Below are positions 3,371-10,648 of a DNA stretch of 64,000 bases, one piece after another; positions within the stretch are counted from its first letter, which is position 1, and every line of letters begins with the position of its first letter. Position numbers and translations under genes: made by a program. The notes under the pieces are model-generated. The model was not told the origin of the DNA, did no database searches, and saw only the letters and a list, made by a program, of their open reading frames with translations. The DNA comes from Auanema rhodensis (lineage: Eukaryota; Animalia; Nematoda): the NCBI GenBank assembly GCA_964057225.1, contig OZ059894.1, positions 6,138,001 to 6,202,000 on the forward strand, in the 5' to 3' direction.

Positions 3371-4076
3371 ATGCTATACAAACTAACGGTTGCCTTCTTT
3401 GTATTCTCTTTCTTTTCGTTAAATCAAGGTTTGTTTTTATACAAACAAATATCATAACATTATCATTTATCGAGGTATCCCATTAAATAACCCGGATGAT
3501 GTAAAACTCTTTGTTAATAAAGTCTTTGATGCAAGTAAAAATCAAAATATAAATCAGTCGTTCACAGGTTTGTTTCTTATCTAACAATTTTCTATTTCTA
3601 TGCTTCCAGTTCATAAAGAGAATAATACAATCATTCTTGATTCTGTGGACATTCCAGATGGTGATAACGTTGATATAGTTAAAGGTTTCTGTTTTAATTA
3701 TTCAAGAGATTTGTTCACAAACATATTCTCGTGTTGTAGTACATGATCAAAGTTCTTTTTTGAAAGGATTTCACTCCTTTATAATTAATATTAATTTTGT
3801 TTCAAACAATAGCAAATGAATAGTCTATTCAATTGACATTTTTCAGTTCTTACGAAGAGAGATAGTACTGATAACAAGGACATCTCAGAAAATAATGATA
3901 GAAAAGCTGAACTATCACTGCATGACGCTAATAATGGCTCCATGAACGTTGTTGTTGGTATATTATATTAAAAAACTTTGTTTTCTTATTAATTAACTAT
4001 TGTAGTTGGAGGAAACAAGCACGTGATTGATAATAATGGAGATGGAATATCCGTATCATCATCTGGAGGATGGTGA
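3371..4076 (+). CDS. Small secreted protein of unknown function
   Basis: Signal peptide MLYKLTVAFFVFSFFSLNQG|IPLNNPDD; consecutive phase-1 introns; ends NGSMNVVVVGGNKHVIDNNGDGISVSSSGGW* (TGA 4074-4076). Exon structure between about 3740 and 3846 is ambiguous. Confidence 0.6.
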
Positions 4077-4247
4077 AAAAAGTTTGATCTCGAAAATGTG
4101 GAATAATAAACTTGAAACTTCAAATTTTTTAATCTTTGTACAACAGTTATACAAGCGTAGTTTACAGATAACAATTTGGAAAACATGGCACAAGAATGAC
4201 TTAGTTTTAAAAACAAAATTGTGTTCCATTGATACAAAAAGATCAAA

Positions 4248-6016
4248 TCATTTATTTTCCGAGAGCCAATTATATGACTTTTGAATTTTATCCACAACTT
4301 GCTGAAAAATAATAAAGTTTCAAGAGAGGCAAAGAAAAATAATAACCTTCCAATATTGGTCAGAATTTTGATCTAAATTTCCAGATGATATTGCAGGAAC
4401 TGATGAGGAACCCCTGCAACAAATATAATGTGATGGGTTTTTTTTTCAATTCTTACCAGGTGGGATCAAACGTTTTGAACATTAAATGCAACCGTTTGAT
4501 GTATTCTGCTTCTGGAATTTTTTTAACAATTGATTGATCGATCTCCGAATTGAGCTGTGATTCATCTTGACCAATTTTATCACGACCGGAACACTAAAAT
4601 TAACACAATAATCTGAATTACGAAAATATCTGATGACCTCTACTTCTGACTCATCGTTAGTCGGACTCAGAAACCACGATTGTGCGTTGGACTGTTGAAT
4701 ATTACGAATTATTTCCTCAAATCCGTAGCGTTTCGCCCTAATAATTGCAATTTAGAATTATAAATAGATCAACAATTACTTAACAGGATTATCCAAACTA
4801 TGTCTTCGTTTTGTAGTTCTAGAGCAAAAACTACTTGTTTGGCTAGCAGAGTCATCAGCAAAGGAAAGTCCGTTCTGAAGTAGCCAATCAGATAAGGGAC
4901 GACTCAACATCTGGAAACAATTGATAACAAAAGTATTATTTAGTTGCATACCTTCGCAAATTCACTGCTAACAATTGAAGTTGAATCAGACGACATTTTT
5001 GCATCACTAACAACATCATATGAGCTTGTTTCTGAGACATCTTCAGGCTGAGCGGCAGTTGTCTTAAAATAATGTTTTAACTATTCTACCAAGCAAACTA
5101 ATTTTACTTTTATAACTTCAAACTCTGCCATCAAAGCTGAAATATCAGCATCTAGAGCGACAGCTCCTGAAGGAATTCGTTTAAGCCAACTTTGAACCTT
5201 TAACAAGTGTAACAAATTAGGAATATACGAGATTGCGAATGCTTACAGTGCTTGCTGGAGCTACATGTCCATTTCGCTCAGAGTTTAACGTTCCAAAACG
5301 AAAAACAGACTTATGAGTCATACCAACATCGTCTTCATAATCTTCCATTTCCCGTGGTAAGCTCTCACCAGACTATAATCTTAGTTTCAGAAAAACAAAT
5401 TTAAATTAACAAATTACAGGTGCAAGTTCATTATGAGAGGAAACAGTCTTCAAACAACCGAATGAAGAGATCGATGAACGAAGTTTCATCAAATCTTTTT
5501 CAAATTCAATTCTTCCAACGTCTTTTGGAATATGCTCGAAATGGTTTAATCTGGAAGGTATGAATGAAATTGTTCTAATGAAGATTTATAATTTTACTTC
5601 ATCAAAATATTTACAGCATTTACAGGTAACCCGTCATTCCTTCTAACTGATTCCAAAACTTGCTGACAAGTTCCTGTAAAGAGCAAATTATGGAATCATA
5701 TAATGATTATGCCAACCAATTCCAGTATGAATTTGTTGTTGCTGCTCTGATAAACTATTTTCTTTTAATGACATTAAAACATCTAGTTGATCTAATAGTT
5801 CTTGTTCGCGAGCACGAATCAAAGACAGTTGTTGAGAAATTGATTGAGAAATTTCTTTTCTGATCTGAATAACCAAATTAGCTACGTCCCTTGAAAACGA
5901 CTTACTGAATCCACATTGGCTCTCAACGAAGCTTTAGAAGACGCTACACATGCAGCAGCATTTTCGAGAGTTATAAGCTTTTGGGAAAGCCCAGCCTCAA
6001 CAGATCGATGGTCCAT
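4248..6016 (-). CDS. NCOA4/ARA70-like protein (candidate ferritinophagy cargo receptor), about 12 exons, roughly 430 aa
   Basis: The spliced N-terminus LRANVDSIRKEISQSISQQLSLIRAREQELLDQLDVLMSLKENSLSEQQQQIHTGIG aligns without gaps to the recalled human NCOA4 coiled coil (IKDNLREVKAQIHSCISRHLECLRSREVWLYEQVDLIYQLKEETLQQQAQQLYSLLG). LRSSISSFGCLKT matches LRQTITTFGSLKT. EFAKMLSRPLSDWLL resembles the ferritin-binding segment. All introns are GT-AG. Confidence 0.8.
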
Positions 6017-6368
6017 AAGGCTACAAGTAGCAATGTATACGATGACACTGATGAAAAATGTATAAAGCAACTAATTCTGGAAAGGAAAACGAAGAACTGA
6101 CCACCGATAACAATTTGAAAATGTTAGATATGAAAATTGATAAACACAAAATGTCCAATTAATAAAAGAAAGCTTGTTAACTTCAAAACCTTTATGTATT
6201 ACACAAAACATAACCCTGTTCCTATTTAAACCAAAAATAGAGAATCACTTAATTATTGATACAATTGACATATTTTCAAAAATCATTGCCAAATATTAGA
6301 CTAAAGACATGTATTACACTCAAGAATAAGCTTATGGAAGCCACTTCCGTGAGAAAGAAGAACAAGTT

Positions 6369-8736
6369 TTATTGTCGATGTAGAACCAGACTAAAAAATA
6401 TTGAAGTAAAAACGGCACTTGAGTTGAACAATTACCTTGAGATGAGAGTGATAAGAGGGTTGGGCATACTAACATCTGGGTGATCTCCAGAGCATCCTCC
6501 CATATCGATGTGGGAAAATTTGATAGGATGGCTGCTGTCAGTTCCGTGCTCATTAAGACGAGAGGCCTAAAAGTTGAACTTTATAACTTCATGATTATAA
6601 AATTGTTTTTACCAGGATAAGGAAAGCACCAGGAGTTTGATGTCCTCGGAGTGTTTGAGCACTGGGTTTGGTGTTTCCTTGTCTTAAATCGGCTTGAGGG
6701 CTTTCAGCTTCATGGAAGGCGAAATCCTATAATGTCCAAATGTATTAATTTTACAAAATGTTAATAATACTTCGGGATGAAGTCTGCTGATTTCGATTGG
6801 TTGTCCATATATATCTCCCACTTCCTGAACCTTTCTGGCCCAACCACTTTGTTTAGCTGGTCCATTATCCATAATAGCAGCATAATATCCATAAGATAGA
6901 ATTTCATGGCCAGTCAAAGTAGCGAGAGTCATAAGATGAGGATTAATAGCAGTTAAAGCTTCTTCTTTGGCTTTAGTAAGGGGGTCAAGCATAGTAATGC
7001 GTCCCTCAGCATCAGTGTTGTAAATGTGAATACGTCTGCCGCTTCTAGATGTAATTACTTCATCGCAAGTGTAAGCACGAGCTCCGATACTGTTGCGAAC
7101 CATACACATGTAACCAACAACCTAGATAACATGATTATTCTAAATCAAGCTGTCGCCACCATACCTTAATATTTTTGGGTTTCAGAATTTCTAAGGCCTT
7201 GAAGAATCCGGCCAAAACAGCACTACCATACTTATCACGGCACATACCAAACATATGCCCTCCAGTCTTAAGATCACATCCTCCTATATTAAAAAATGAT
7301 ACAGGGCAAGTGTATTCCTATGAAATACCGGTATCGAGAGTTACACCCTTTCCTACAAGGTAGATAGTATCCTTAACTTCACCTTCACCATTGTATTCCA
7401 ATCGAATGAGTCTGGCCTTTAAAAATAGTTTTTATCAGGTAGGTAGAAAGATAAGCATACTCTATGTTCGGGGACAGTATTGGCACATCTATTAACTGCA
7501 TGCATCAAAGGATACTCTTTTAAAATTACGTCTTGATTATCTTCAACATCCACTTTAACGTGGCCACCGGCGAATGCAGCCTGAAGCAACAGTTTAAATT
7601 CACAAAAATGTGAGGAAAAAAGTATGAAATCTGACAAAAATTTACCTTGACATATTCAGCAACACGAGGAGGAGCCATTCGTTCAGGTCCTTGCTCGCCG
7701 ATATCACGACAAACCGTCATAGCTGCTTCATATGCACTAATAAGTTCGACTAAGTTGGATGTATTGGAGTGCTAAAACTTTTACTAAATTTTAAGAATAA
7801 GCTCTCGAACTAACACTGAGGAATCCCAATGAATCAAGTCTTTGAGTTTTATCTTCTTCTCTAACATTTAATGGAGTATACGCAGGTAGCAAAGCTCCCA
7901 ATGCGGATACTAATTCAGCTTGTGGAAATCGAGGAGTTGGGATAGTTACAAGAAGAGGCGATCGCATGCCCACAGATAAAGCCCTGGAAAAGTCTGTTTA
8001 ATTTTTCATTTTTCATATTTCAAGAATTTCAATCGTTTCAAATAAGAATATGAATCTTAAATTCAAAGTGAGATCAATATACATGAGGGCTTTCTAATTT
8101 TAGTTTTTTTGAACGATTCAAATTGCTAAGGTATAATCACTTTTATGAATTTCACGAAATTCTTCTGTAATTTCATAAACTATAGTCCCATATTTTTGTA
8201 ATAGATCATTAGTCGATGAATTGAAACAAAAAATATAATTGGAACCCTTTTGTACTTTTCAAGAACAGAGATAGCACTCGATAAGAAAACTAATAGTCAT
8301 AAAAGATTAAAAAAATAATTGTATGAAGGAATACTATCTTACAATTTCATTCCATTTTTTCCAGCAGTTTGGAATCGACGAACATCATCGTAATCTCTGG
8401 AAACATTACCTAGAAATGGATACAAATTAAATCAATATAAAAAGCGTAAAAGAACCAGTTCCAGAAAGCACAATTCTTCCAGAAGGTACAATACTCTTGT
8501 CAACAGCAACAAGTGAGGTAGTATTAACACAACCTTGGTGAATCTAAATTTTAAAATTTTTAAATGAAACGGTTAGAATCCAATACATCGGCAAAATTCT
8601 GCACAACTCCTGCCAAACTTGCTGTGTGCTCAAAATTAAGAAGTTGCTTAGAGCAACTCGTTACTAACACAACTCCATCAAAGGCTGCGTCAGCGATTGA
8701 CGATGCCTTGACTAATCGAGTGGAAAGATAATTCAT
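6369..8736 (-). CDS. lap-2: M17 leucine aminopeptidase, orthologue of C. elegans W07G4.4
   Basis: Motifs VGKGVTLDTGGCDLK, GMCRDKYG, NTDAEGR, ATLTG and SHIDMGG. Canonical GT-AG introns; TAA at 6369-6371. A short N-terminal extension upstream of ATG 8736 is possible. Confidence 0.93.
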
Positions 8737-9596
8737 AGTAACTTGAGACAGTAAGCCTGAAAAAAGTAGTTTAATATCAAAAATATAATCAAGGTAAAAT
8801 CGAAAGAGATAAAGGAAACAAAGAAGTGTGGCATGCATTTGGATGAGCTGCATAATATAATGTTAAGACGCCATCAAGAAGTAGTTTATCAAATGAAGAA
8901 ATTGTAGCCAAATCTCCTGAACAAACAAAAAGAGGATTCACAACGGGTGATGGAGAACTGTAATCGAAGTGACGAAACGGGAAAATGTTTAATGCGCACC
9001 GATAGCATTTGTGTTTGAAGTATTTTAGAAATATAATTCAAAAGATTACTAAAAAAAGCAGGCACTACCCATAAAATAAATATATAAACTTCTTACTACT
9101 CAAAATTTGCAAAAAATATCAAACCTATCGGAGATCCTTCTCTCTCTATATATATATAGATTTATACATGAACATTACATGCATAGAAGGCACGTGATGT
9201 CAAATTGAAAATATAATACGCATTTGCGAGGGGCATTTTATATGTATGCTAAGCCTATTCAATTCTCTTCTACTCTCTCGGCGCCCTAAGGCCTTCCTAA
9301 AACTTAGGAAACTGAATTGAAATCGATAATTCTAAGTATATTATTGTTCAAGTAGAATAGAGAAGATAATAAATTGGTGATTCTGTGTTCAAAAGTCAAC
9401 AGAAAAAGAGTTTATCCTTATTTTAAGAATATTTTCTGGAACAGAAAACTGTGTTTTATTTTCAATTTTTTATATAGTTAAATACGAAACGGAAGTATTA
9501 TATCAATCATTTAACTAAGAAAATTACACAGAAGAGTTTCCTCATTTTTAGTTATTACGATATATTACATGATTGTTTTTAAAATATGCGACAAGA

Positions 9597-9600
<4 letters not shown>

Positions 9601-9662
<62 letters not shown>
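9601..9662. repeat. Compound microsatellite (TA)22(GA)9
   Basis: Directly visible. Confidence 0.97.
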
Positions 9663-10648
9663 AAGAAAGGAAAAGAAGGAAAGAGAAGGATATTCAGTAA
9701 CGATCTTGACAATAAATAATAAAATAAATCAGGAAAATGGCATCTTCAGCGAGTGAGGCAACGTCTTAGGTTAGTGAAAGAAATGTTTTCGAAATATGAA
9801 GGAGGAAAGCAATATTCTACGACTGAAGATCACTAAGCTTCTATTAAATAGAAAGAGCTTTTCAATGCTTCTAAATTCGTCTTAGAAATTGATGCTGATG
9901 CACATTTTAAAAGGAATCATCACTGTCTGATTATAATGGAGAGGAAGCATGGTAAAGGGCAATTAGGAAAGACTGTGCCCGTGTTTTATCGAACTTACAG
10001 AGTAACTTTAGGACTCACTTGATGTGGGAAGAAATCTTGTGAAAACTGAAATTAATTTCAAGATAACAGTGTGTCTTCTAGATAGATAAGGAAATAAAAA
10101 CAATATCGCTTGACGTGTTCCACAGTACAGCTAAGAATTGGAAAGGGGAGTCATGTCACTAATAGCTGCTATGAGCCATATTAGGATTAGTAGCATTAAT
10201 AGATAGAAAACGATAAGAACTTTAGCAGGACTTTGCTACTCGTACTTAATTTTTTTCTTCCTGGAGAACTGATATCATATTACGAGGTTACAAGCAAAGA
10301 CTTGTAGTTCTCTCTTAATTTCCCGATAAGACAACCAAGCGGTAAAAGAACAAACATTCAAACTGTTTCTCAAGAAAAATCATGTAAAACAACATAACAA
10401 GAGAAGCAACGAGAAGGTATGACGTTACCTTCACTTCAACAATAATAACGACGGCCTAAATTAGTTTCAGAGATCATGTTTTACTGATCCATCTATCTAT
10501 CATATCAGATTTAAACGTACATATATCATTTTTAAACAGTCTATCAATCATTTTCAGAAATATTTATTATTATGTCTAGAATAAAGAAGTATATTGAATA
10601 TTAGACATCAATGAATATGGCAAGCAACTGATAAAAGTAATATACATA

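What the first reader, a model, noticed from the sequence alone, without database searches (positions are those of the whole stretch)
4248..6016. Nematode NCOA4-like protein retaining the ferritin-binding motif: candidate ferritinophagy receptor
Seen: the spliced protein has an N-terminal coiled-coil region and the segment EFAKMLSRPLSDWLL (4878-4963). That segment is split by an intron, so it is invisible in the ORF track. Established (from memory): human NCOA4 has the ARA70 coiled coil and binds FTH1 via SFQVIKNSPLSEWLI (I489/W497). The two segments align as F-x-x-[I/M]-x3-P-L-S-[D/E]-W-L-[I/L]. Inference: a functional NCOA4-ferritin autophagy system in rhabditid nematodes, where I do not recall a characterised NCOA4; that novelty must be verified.
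Basis: partly seen in the sequence, partly recalled or inferred. Interest (0 to 1): 0.85.

Follow-up and report, generated by a model that had tools for sequence, protein, structure and literature searches.

The report
Nematode NCOA4-like autophagy receptor gene
This is a real, expressed worm gene related to human NCOA4, the protein that delivers the iron store ferritin to lysosomes; it keeps a close copy of NCOA4's ferritin-gripping segment, which matters because worms are said in the literature to have no NCOA4.

Summary
A 12-exon minus-strand gene (4248-6016) encodes a 427-aa protein. Transcript contigs from four runs of one study show all 11 introns, including the 4911-4951 intron that splits EFAK|MLSRPLSDWLL.

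Eight nematode orthologues were found. The Pfam ARA70 (NCOA4) model is the top hit in six of them, and one passes the curated cut-off. Public databases already name two of them NCOA4. So the gene belongs to the NCOA4 family.

The segment SEFAKMLSRPLSDWLL is the best match in the protein to human NCOA4 484-499 (48 of 100,000 shuffles reach it). It keeps the hydrophobic anchors F486, W497 and I499 (I489 becomes M), plus P493, L494 and L498. It is conserved in rhabditid and strongylid orthologues and degenerate in aphelenchid ones.

Ferritin binding is inferred, not shown. No iron-sulfur cysteine cluster is present.

By conserved position next to lap-2, the likely C. elegans counterpart is W07G4.5. 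That protein is a published intestinal autophagy substrate that binds EPG-7 (FIP200-like) and has been described as nematode-specific with no known motifs. I could not fetch its sequence, so this link is untested.

Verdict: a new member of a known kind, and a good testable candidate for the worm ferritinophagy receptor.

The parts
4248..6016 (-). Coding region of the NCOA4-like gene. It has 12 exons: 6016-5906, 5864-5717, 5673-5598, 5550-5418, 5372-5247, 5197-5108, 5062-4952, 4910-4780, 4737-4638, 4593-4457, 4413-4347 and 4301-4248. The protein is 427 aa.
   Evidence: Model built. All 11 introns are seen as joints in transcript contigs of 4 runs. The protein aligns over its full length with orthologues.
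4134..6098 (-). Extent of the mRNA as covered by transcript contigs, including the 5' and 3' untranslated parts.
   Evidence: table 8: contigs reach 4134/4155 on one side and 6078/6098 on the other.
5418..6016 (-). Exons 1-4 (with their introns), residues 1-156: the N-terminal ARA70-I-type coiled-coil domain, which is TRIM-like. It includes IRAREQELLDQLD (5819-5781) and LRSSISSFGCLKTV (5483-5442).
   Evidence: Orthologues match Pfam PF12489 over profile positions 34-128: P0007 26.5 bits (cut-off 23.6), P0008 22.9, P0003 22.2, P0009 20.5, P0004 17.4, P0001 13.0. The window protein aligns to these with blastp E 4e-41 and 6e-38. A family profile gives weak hits to the TRIM3 and TRIM45 coiled coils.
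5165..5197 (-). Conserved island VQSWLKRIPSG (residues 199-209), the first of the tryptophan-leucine short motifs.
   Evidence: Conserved as SV+xWLxKIPSG in P0001, P0005 and P0006.
5111..5125 (-). EFEVI (residues 223-227): a candidate Atg8-family (LGG-1/LGG-2) interaction motif with canonical F-x-x-I core preceded by an acidic residue.
   Evidence: Present in the seven orthologues that cover this region, as EFEVI, EFDVI, DFEVI, EYEFV, SFEII or SFEVI. Function is inferred from the LIR consensus only.
5009..5023 (-). SYDVV (residues 242-246): a second, weaker LIR-like core (Y-x-x-V) in an acidic, serine-rich stretch.
   Evidence: Aligned with SFEVM, SFDPI, SFDII and HFDKI in orthologues. Inference only.
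4952..4966 (-). First half of the ferritin-binding-like segment, SEFAK (residues 261-265), at the end of exon 7.
   Evidence: F263 corresponds to human F486.
4878..4910 (-). Second half of the ferritin-binding-like segment, MLSRPLSDWLL (residues 266-276), at the start of exon 8.
   Evidence: M266, P270, L271, W274, L275 and L276 correspond to human I489, P493, L494, W497, L498 and I499. The human residue roles come from PMC11076521 and PMC4592949.
4668..4721 (-). Conserved island FEEIIRNIQQSNAQSWFL (residues 315-332): an amphipathic helix followed by a tryptophan motif. It is the C-terminal element conserved in most orthologues.
   Evidence: F315 is matched in 7 of the 8 orthologues, that is, in every orthologue that reaches this region. 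AlphaFold2 predicts a helix at the equivalent place in P0001.
4263..4355 (-). C-terminal helix YWKQVVDKIQKSYNWL (residues 408-423), split by the last intron (4346-4302).
   Evidence: The terminal WL is conserved in six of the seven orthologues that reach the C-terminus; truncated P0006 has L at the aligned spot and P0009 stops short. The P0001 model is helical there with block pLDDT up to 76.
6177..8853 (-). Upstream neighbour on the same strand: a leucine aminopeptidase gene (Peptidase_M17, lap-2-like). Its mRNA 3' end lies about 80-140 bases from the 5' end of the NCOA4-like mRNA. The far boundary at 8853 is approximate.
   Evidence: The ORF at 6684-7109 matches PF00883 at E 7e-19. Separate transcript contigs start at 6177/6214. 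The same gene order and strand are seen in Dictyocaulus viviparus locus L001.

Best explanation
Shown: this is an expressed, correctly spliced nematode gene for a 427-aa member of the NCOA4 (ARA70) family. It has an N-terminal TRIM-like coiled-coil domain. The rest is a mostly disordered tail carrying six conserved short islands, several of them serine/acid-x-W-L motifs.

Inferred: the protein works as human NCOA4 does in ferritinophagy.
- The coiled coil dimerises the protein.
- The helix-proline-helix segment SEFAKMLSRPLSDWLL (residues 261-276) docks into the helix A / B-C loop cleft of nematode ferritin. F263, M266, W274 and L276 would act as hydrophobic anchors, and P270 would bridge the lysine that replaces human FTH1 R23.
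- Dimer plus 24-mer cargo then gives multivalent condensates.
- The conserved EFEVI motif (and perhaps SYDVV or the W-L motifs) links these condensates to Atg8-family proteins and to the FIP200/Atg11-like scaffold EPG-7 for delivery to lysosomes and release of iron.

Unlike vertebrate NCOA4, the protein has no ARA70-II domain and no four-cysteine iron-sulfur site. Iron sensing, if any, must therefore work differently.

By position, downstream of lap-2, its C. elegans counterpart is probably W07G4.5. The confidence given is for the ferritin-receptor function; membership of the NCOA4 family alone I put at about 0.9.
For: Gene and splicing.

Family membership:
- PF12489 is the top Pfam family in 6 of 8 orthologues, all at the same position, and one is above the curated cut-off.
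- NCBI and UniRef names call the Aphelenchoides avenae and Bursaphelenchus okinawaensis orthologues NCOA4.
- The nearest ESM Atlas feature matches of P0005 are ARA70/NCOA4 clusters, score 0.94 with 205-206 of 256 shared features.
- The weak TRIM3/TRIM45 and PML_CC hits agree with the published HHpred link between the NCOA4 N-terminus and the TRIM28 coiled coil (PMC9452830).

Motif:
- The human 484-499 sequence was verified in PDB 8wiq_A.
The same aligned place wins in P0001, P0005 and P0006.
- The F-to-P spacing of 7 and the P-to-W spacing of 4 are identical to human.
- Matched positions are the published contact or scan-sensitive residues F486, I489, P493, L494, W497, L498 and I499 (PMC11076521; PMC4592949).
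- AlphaFold2 of P0001 gives helix, break at R-P, helix over this segment. This is the shape described for NCOA4 on FTH1.

Ferritin side: PDB ferritins 7urh and 7usn, which I take to be C. elegans FTN-2 and FTN-1, keep A19, N22, Y30, R80 and S114. They have R23>K, L27>I/V and D90>E.

Context:
- W07G4.5 forms intestinal aggregates, is removed by autophagy, and was the main two-hybrid partner of the FIP200/Atg11-like EPG-7 (PMC3613692; PMC4502811).
- The lap-2 / NCOA4-like gene order is shared by the window and Dictyocaulus.
Against: - No binding, localisation or iron phenotype was or could be tested here.
- The whole window protein could not be scanned against Pfam, because a spliced protein has no reference. 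Single exons gave no ARA70 hit. Two orthologues (P0005, P0006) give no ARA70 hit, and most others are below the curated cut-off.
- A profile of the motif alone did not retrieve the human peptide in PDB. Its best hit was a chance match in an RNA polymerase subunit, E 0.52. So the motif is not significant on its own across a database.
- The family carries several similar W-L motifs, so one of them resembling the human ferritin-binding one is less surprising than the shuffle test suggests.
- The motif is degenerate in Aphelenchoides and absent at that place in Bursaphelenchus.
- Ferritin cleft residues F82, K87 and V111 are changed (V/A, Q, N) in the nematode-type ferritins.
- The C-terminal half of P0001 alone found nothing in the Atlas.
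- The iron-sulfur cysteines of human NCOA4 are missing: there are only 5 scattered Cys.
- Orthology to W07G4.5 rests on gene order and cosmid numbering only.
Confidence: 0.5

Rival explanations
1. It is a true NCOA4-family protein and a selective-autophagy substrate or scaffold, but ferritin is not its cargo. On this reading the W-L motifs, including PLSDWLL, are generic short docking motifs. They could dock the Claw/Atg11 domain of EPG-7 (FIP200-interacting-region type: acidic/serine run plus bulky hydrophobic) or Atg8-family proteins. The likeness to the human ferritin-binding segment would then reflect a shared motif class rather than shared cargo.
For: The family has four to eight W-L motifs per protein with S/D/E before the tryptophan. 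In Aphelenchoides the best match to the human 16-mer falls on a different W-L motif, and in Bursaphelenchus no match stands out. The human SFQVI part is itself an Atg8-family (GATE16) binding motif (bioRxiv 10.1101/2024.06.09.597909). W07G4.5 binds EPG-7 directly in two-hybrid. Three ferritin cleft residues differ in nematode-type ferritins.
Against: The upstream F-x2-hydrophobic-x3-P part, which is what sets the ferritin-binding element apart from the other W-L motifs, is kept at exact spacing in four orthologues. The ferritin residues whose mutation abolishes binding in human are kept or conservatively replaced (A19, N22; R23>K). W07G4.5 is expressed in the intestine, which is also where ftn-1 and ftn-2 are transcribed (abstract of PMC3240588).
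Confidence: 0.35
2. The helix F-A-K-M-L (FLELL in P0001) is a nuclear-receptor box of the FxxLL/FxxLF type. On this reading the protein acts mainly as a nuclear receptor coactivator, the activity for which ARA70 was first named.
For: P0001 has a literal FxxLL there. W07G4.5::GFP is partly nuclear. FxxLF in ARA70 and FxxLL in a Strongyloides DAF-12 coactivator are known receptor-binding variants (PMC7923533).
Against: The window protein has FAKML and the strongylids have FLNTL, which do not fit FxxLL. Conservation extends through P-L-S-x-W-L, which a receptor box does not need. The autophagic turnover of W07G4.5 is not explained by this reading.
Confidence: 0.08
3. The protein is an unrelated nematode coiled-coil protein, for example a TRIM-derived one, whose likeness to NCOA4 is chance. 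The motif match would then be a coincidence in a serine-rich disordered tail.
For: Most ARA70 scores are below Pfam's cut-off and coiled coils attract spurious hits. PML_CC and TRIM coiled coils also score weakly. Foldseek with the model found nothing.
Against: ARA70 is the top family in six orthologues, always over the same profile span including the non-coiled FE-D...R...FG part. One passes the curated cut-off. Independent language-model features give NCOA4 clusters first. NCOA4 itself is known to be TRIM-like. The motif adds a second, independent point of likeness in the right order along the chain.
Confidence: 0.05

Closest known systems
Human NCOA4 (ARA70), the ferritinophagy receptor
   Same: Both have an N-terminal ARA70-I / TRIM-like coiled coil followed by a largely disordered chain with short motifs. 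Both carry a helix-Pro-helix segment with the same spacing and the same anchors (F, I/M, P, L, W, L, I/L) as human residues 486-499. Both have LIR-type motifs near or in that segment. If W07G4.5 is the orthologue, both also form puncta, are turned over by autophagy and depend on a FIP200-type scaffold.
   Different: The worm protein is 427 aa. It has no ARA70-II domain and no C404/C410/C416/C422-type iron-sulfur cysteine cluster, so no evident HERC2/iron switch. S485 and S492 are replaced (E, R). The worm's best LIR candidate (EFEVI) lies about 35 residues upstream of the ferritin-like segment, whereas the human second LIR is the FAECV motif. The FIP200 link may be direct rather than through TAX1BP1. 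Ferritin binding is untested.
C. elegans W07G4.5 (autophagy substrate reporter bpIs239)
   Same: It is the gene next to lap-2 (W07G4.4), as in the window and in Dictyocaulus. Its gene size is similar (about 1.7 kb). It is described as conserved within nematodes and lacking known motifs, which fits a very diverged ARA70 domain that standard searches miss.
   Different: Its sequence could not be fetched with these tools, so orthology is an inference from position. Its published role is as a substrate and EPG-7 partner, and no link to iron or ferritin has been reported in the papers searched.
Database-annotated nematode NCOA4 proteins (Aphelenchoides avenae 'Nuclear receptor coactivator 4'; Bursaphelenchus okinawaensis 'NCOA4 N-terminal domain-containing protein')
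   Same: They are clear orthologues of the window protein over the N-terminal 200-230 residues (blastp E 4e-41 and 6e-38). They share the EFEVI-type motif, the FxxxI...W island and the C-terminal WL.
   Different: Their names come from automatic pipelines. The ferritin-binding-like segment is degenerate (Aphelenchoides) or missing at that place (Bursaphelenchus). They are not next to an aminopeptidase gene.
TRIM-family coiled-coil / COS region (TRIM28, TRIM3, TRIM45, PML)
   Same: A long antiparallel-type dimerising helix. There are weak profile hits (E 0.016-0.03 in PDB; PML_CC E 0.0015-0.02 in Pfam). UniRef calls the Heterorhabditis fragment 'COS domain-containing'.
   Different: There is no RING, B-box or C-terminal substrate domain. 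The similarity is below significance and is already known for NCOA4 itself.

Membership tests
NCOA4 / ARA70 (Pfam PF12489) | N-terminal ARA70-I domain: coiled coil plus the following conserved FE-D...R...FG stretch | tested here: met
   Orthologues score against PF12489 as follows: P0007 26.5 bits (cut-off 23.6, E 7e-6), P0008 22.9, P0003 22.2, P0009 20.5, P0004 17.4, P0001 13.0. PF12489 is always the top family and always spans profile positions 34-128. The window protein aligns with these over residues 5-228 (E 4e-41). Atlas features put NCOA4 clusters first. Caveat: this is met by transitivity, because the spliced window protein itself could not be scanned and single exons gave nothing.
NCOA4 / ARA70 (Pfam PF12489) | ARA70-II domain (human residues 198-332) | tested here: not met
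   No second ARA70 stretch is found in any orthologue. This is expected: the domain is reported to be restricted to vertebrates (PMC3144208), so it does not define the wider family.
NCOA4 as ferritinophagy receptor | FTH1-binding element (human 485-499; anchors F486, I489, W497, I499; P493 bridge; L494 and L498 scan-sensitive) | tested here: met
   At the sequence level, SEFAKMLSRPLSDWLL has F, M, P, L, W, L, L at those positions with identical spacing. It is the best match in the protein (48 of 100,000 shuffles). It is conserved in P0001, P0005 and P0006. It is not conserved in Bursaphelenchus. A motif profile alone is not significant PDB-wide.
NCOA4 as ferritinophagy receptor | Physical binding to ferritin H-type subunits and ferritin delivery to lysosomes | not testable with these tools
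   Only indirect evidence is available. Nematode-type ferritins in PDB (7urh, 7usn) keep A19, N22, Y30, R80 and S114. They have R23>K, L27>I/V and D90>E, but F82>V/A, K87>Q and V111>N. No multimer modelling tool was on hand.
NCOA4 as ferritinophagy receptor | Iron-sulfur cluster cysteines (C404, C410, C416, C422) giving iron-dependent regulation | tested here: not met
   The window protein has 5 cysteines, at residues 23, 89, 144, 294 and 343, with no cluster. The human feature is taken from bioRxiv 10.1101/2024.06.09.597909.
Selective autophagy receptors in general | Atg8-family interaction motif(s) | tested here: inconclusive
   A canonical acidic F-x-x-I core (EFEVI, residues 223-227) is conserved in all seven orthologues that cover this region. 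There is a second weaker core, SYDVV. The consensus has low information content, and binding was not tested.
Selective autophagy receptors in general | Autophagy-dependent turnover and binding to a FIP200/Atg11-type scaffold | not tested
   This is published for C. elegans W07G4.5 (PMC3613692, PMC4502811). Whether W07G4.5 is the orthologue was not testable here. Support is limited to shared gene order with lap-2.

The most novel reading that the evidence does not exclude
The rhabditid NCOA4-like family, including C. elegans W07G4.5 (for a decade a standard 'nematode-specific' autophagy-substrate reporter), is the missing worm ferritinophagy receptor. In that case recognition of ferritin through the F-x2-Φ-x3-P-L-x2-W-L-Φ segment, and condensate-based delivery through a FIP200-type scaffold, would predate the split between nematodes and vertebrates. 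The vertebrate iron-sulfur/HERC2 switch would be a later addition.
Probability: 0.4. Interest if true: 0.8.

Novelty: new member of a known kind. Interest (0 to 1): 0.6.

Why it matters
Ferritin is degraded by autophagy in C. elegans, yet the field states that worms have no NCOA4 (PMC7928448), so the receptor is an open question. This gene family is a concrete candidate, with specific residues to mutate (W274 and M266 in this species).

If the positional orthologue W07G4.5 is confirmed, three things follow. A widely used autophagy reporter gains an identity. Its intestinal puncta may be ferritin condensates. And the genetics of ferritinophagy becomes accessible in a simple animal.

It would also show which parts of NCOA4 are ancient (coiled coil, ferritin-binding segment, Atg8 and scaffold links) and which are vertebrate additions (ARA70-II, iron-sulfur sensing).

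Tried and rejected
1. Pfam on the ten largest single exons gave no ARA70 hit. Exons of 24-49 aa are too short.
2. PDB sequence searches with exon 2, exon 8, two orthologue segments and a 3-sequence motif profile gave no NCOA4 chain. In one search I picked the wrong residue range of P0005. The motif profile's best hit was a chance ILTKEFLATLPLSKWL in an RNA polymerase subunit (E 0.52), a warning against over-reading the motif.
3. The whole spliced protein was never submitted to any search tool.
4. The three word-indexed homologue searches and the one exhaustive search with exon 4 found nine nematode sequences. They found no Caenorhabditis and no non-nematode NCOA4, so no profile-profile test against vertebrate NCOA4 could be run.
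5. A metagenome scan with the family alignment found nothing.
6. An alignment that included the exon pieces (A3) was not used as a query, because most of its columns were gaps.
7. An Atlas search with the C-terminal 273 residues of P0001 gave no usable hit.
8. Foldseek of the AlphaFold2 model against PDB gave nothing below E 5. The model is one helix plus disorder.
9. I looked in the window for a SCYL1-type kinase gene beyond lap-2, since C. elegans W07G4.3 is scyl-1. None was evident in ORFs out to 17 kb, so synteny rests on lap-2 alone.
10. The Aphelenchoides and Bursaphelenchus loci show no lap-2 synteny.
11. Literature: no paper holds both W07G4.5 and NCOA4. The only nematode paper mentioning ARA70 does so in passing. 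No worm ferritinophagy receptor turned up.
12. PDB codes 7urh, 7usn and 8cu8 were not found in any relevant paper. Their assignment to C. elegans FTN-2 and FTN-1 therefore rests on my memory of those sequences.
Full report
THE OBSERVATION

The region 4248-6016 holds a minus-strand gene. Reading the reverse strand in three frames, I assembled 12 exons with GT..AG introns of 41-50 bases.

Public runs were then searched with the stretch. Four runs of one study held 51% of its sampled words, which is what a spliced copy would give. Laying their contigs on 4000-6400 showed single contigs of about 1.4 kb that skip exactly eleven stretches. All eleven have CT..AC ends on the + strand, which is GT..AG on the gene's strand.

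Ten joints matched my model. The eleventh showed that exon 9 ends at 4638, not 4644. The final protein is 427 aa.

EFAK (4963-4952) and MLSRPLSDWLL (4910-4878) are therefore joined in the mRNA. The runs are labelled RNA only as a guess, but intron-free contigs with splice-site ends can hardly be anything else.

WHAT THE PROTEIN IS

Single exons gave nothing in Pfam or PDB. An exhaustive search with exon 4 (44 aa) found a 422-aa relative, P0001. From it, word-indexed searches collected seven more:
- Dictyocaulus viviparus (P0005)
- Strongylus vulgaris (P0006, truncated)
- Heterorhabditis bacteriophora (P0009, fragment)
- Aphelenchoides avenae (P0003)
- a second JGI sequence (P0004)
- Bursaphelenchus okinawaensis and B. 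xylophilus (P0007, P0008)

The window protein aligns with P0001 over its whole length (41% identity, E 1e-104) and with the others at E 1e-38 to 1e-70. This also validates the exon model.

Several lines tie the family to NCOA4:
- Pfam ARA70 (PF12489) is the top-scoring family in six of the eight, always over profile positions 34-128. Scores are 26.5 (above the 23.6 cut-off), 22.9, 22.2, 20.5, 17.4 and 13.0 bits.
- NCBI names the Aphelenchoides protein 'Nuclear receptor coactivator 4'. UniRef names the B. okinawaensis one 'NCOA4 N-terminal domain-containing'.
- Language-model features of P0005 have ARA70/NCOA4 clusters as nearest neighbours, score 0.94 with 205-206 of 256 shared features.
- Weak hits to TRIM3 and TRIM45 coiled coils and to PML_CC fit the published observation that the NCOA4 N-terminal domain resembles the TRIM28 coiled coil and homodimerises (PMC9452830).

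I conclude with about 0.9 confidence that this is an NCOA4-family gene. The earlier survey of NCOA4 orthologues listed cnidarians, echinoderms, hemichordates and vertebrates but no nematode (PMC3144208).

THE FERRITIN-BINDING-LIKE SEGMENT

The human sequence was checked rather than trusted. PDB 8wiq_A, a fusion of the native NCOA4 peptide to ferritin H chain, begins DSFQVIKNSPLSEWLI.

The published roles of the human residues are these:
- The cryo-EM study assigns F486, I489 and W497 to three hydrophobic pockets.
- I499 packs against F82 and R80.
- P493 forms a bridge over R23 between an alpha-helical and a 3-10 segment.
- Hydrogen bonds run from S485, S492 and W497 (PMC11076521).
- Alanine scanning found W497 most important, then I489, S492, L494 and L498 (PMC4592949).

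In the window protein the aligned residues are F, M, P, L, W, L, L at identical spacing, with S485>E and S492>R.

Scoring the human 16-mer without gaps along the protein puts the maximum (36) exactly on residues 261-276. The next best score is 17, and 48 of 100,000 shuffles of the protein reach 36. The same aligned place is the maximum in P0001, P0005 and P0006, with shuffle counts of 187, 477 and 879 per 100,000. These four are related, so they do not count as four independent trials.

AlphaFold2 of P0001 predicts helix 235-242, a break at R-P, then helix 245-252 over this segment, at modest confidence.

Four cautions apply:
- The family carries several S/D/E-x-W-L motifs.
- In Aphelenchoides the best match to the human peptide is another such motif, with the same F-to-W distance. 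In Bursaphelenchus nothing stands out.
- A profile of the motif alone did not find the human peptide in PDB and instead found a chance look-alike.
- The C-terminal half alone found nothing in the Atlas.

The likeness is therefore real and conserved in the rhabditid/strongylid branch. Its meaning depends on the homology context.

THE FERRITIN SIDE

This retrieved PDB chains 7urh/8cu8 at 100% identity and 7usn (FTN-1-like), with human FTH1 aligned below them. The tool does not give the organism.

Against the human residues that line the NCOA4 cleft, the two nematode-type ferritins compare as follows:
- Kept: A19, N22, Y30, R80 and S114.
- Conservative changes: R23>K, L27>I/V, D90>E.
- Changed: F82>V or A, K87>Q, V111>N.

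In human FTH1, A19Y, N22A and R23A abolish binding, while R23L and R23I keep part of it in cells. The cleft is thus partly conserved. That is compatible with binding but not proof of it.

OTHER CONSERVED ISLANDS AND THE LIKELY MECHANISM

Beyond the domain, conservation is confined to short islands:
- VQSWLKRIPSG
- EFEVI, a canonical acidic F-x-x-I core present in all seven orthologues that cover the region
- SYDVV
- the ferritin-like segment
- KRRHS
- FEEIIRNIQQS....W
- a C-terminal helix ending in WL

Human NCOA4 383-522 uses two LIR-like motifs, FAECV and SFQVI, to bind GATE16, and SFQVI overlaps the ferritin contact. Human ferritin-NCOA4 condensates need NCOA4 dimerisation plus FTH1 binding.

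The worm protein has the matching parts: a dimerising coiled coil, a cargo-binding-like segment and Atg8-type motifs. It lacks ARA70-II and the four iron-sulfur cysteines. So I propose the same receptor logic without the vertebrate iron switch.

THE C. ELEGANS CONNECTION

In the window, a Peptidase_M17 gene lies immediately upstream on the same strand. Its transcript contigs begin about 80-140 bases from the 5' end of the NCOA4-like mRNA. Dictyocaulus has the same order and strand. Aphelenchoides and Bursaphelenchus do not.

The C. elegans neighbour W07G4.5 has this published record:
- It was recovered 18 times among 36 two-hybrid clones interacting with EPG-7, a protein similar to FIP200 and Atg11.
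- It forms aggregates in intestinal cytoplasm and nuclei.
- It disappears on starvation or TOR inhibition.
- It was described as nematode-specific with no known motifs (PMC3613692; PMC4502811).

No paper in the library holds both W07G4.5 and NCOA4. A 2021 paper states there is no NCOA4 homology in C. elegans although autophagy degrades its ferritin (PMC7928448).

I could not obtain the W07G4.5 sequence, so this link is an inference from position (my estimate is about 0.8). It is the first thing to check.

NOVELTY AND VERDICT

Family membership is already implied by automatic database names for two plant- or fungus-associated nematodes. The kind is therefore known, and this is a new member.

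Three things are not in the literature I could search. One is the retention of the ferritin-binding-like segment in rhabditid and strongylid nematodes. Another is the matching partial conservation of the ferritin cleft. The third is the probable identity with a long-used autophagy reporter.

The finding is worth following up, and the function remains to be shown. A note from another window of this genome names Auanema sp. JU1783 as a close relative. I did not test that.

Noticed in passing
window 6078-6214: The lap-2-like mRNA ends at about 6177-6214 and the NCOA4-like mRNA begins at 6078-6098, so the two same-strand genes are only about 80-140 bases apart. That is an operon-like spacing. Three of four contigs stop at 6078, right at a tttccag acceptor, which would fit trans-splicing of a leader there.
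   Followed up: partly
window 4000-4160: A separate, lower-depth transcript covers 4000-4160, just beyond the 3' end of the NCOA4-like mRNA. It probably belongs to a small + strand gene whose exons show as ORFs at 3600-3746 and 4027-4284, which would mean convergent 3' ends.
   Followed up: no
window 9548-9719: A microsatellite of (TA)n followed by (GA)n shows up as repetitive ORFs between the aminopeptidase gene and the next gene.
   Followed up: no
window 4797-4811: A conserved basic island KRRHS (KR-x-HS in most orthologues) lies about 25 residues after the ferritin-like segment. Its R-R-x-S form looks like a basophilic kinase site or part of a nuclear localisation signal.
   Followed up: no
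L002:1-993 and L003:3209-5820: The NCOA4-like gene lies about 9 kb from a Beclin/APG6 gene in Aphelenchoides avenae and about 4 kb from an ATG7 gene in Bursaphelenchus okinawaensis. This is probably coincidence.
   Followed up: no
P0005, P0006, P0009 (database proteins): The public gene models look faulty. The Dictyocaulus protein carries a duplicated DDAVMAH... stretch and an odd hydrophobic insertion. The Strongylus and Heterorhabditis entries are truncated and end in unrelated residues. This may be why these entries carry no NCOA4 name.
   Followed up: partly
P0009 and PDB hits 8amr_A, 8sdi_A: UniRef labels the Heterorhabditis fragment 'COS domain-containing protein', and the family profile weakly hits the TRIM3 and TRIM45 coiled coils. 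This suggests the ARA70-I domain is a TRIM coiled coil plus COS-like box that has lost RING and B-box.
   Followed up: partly
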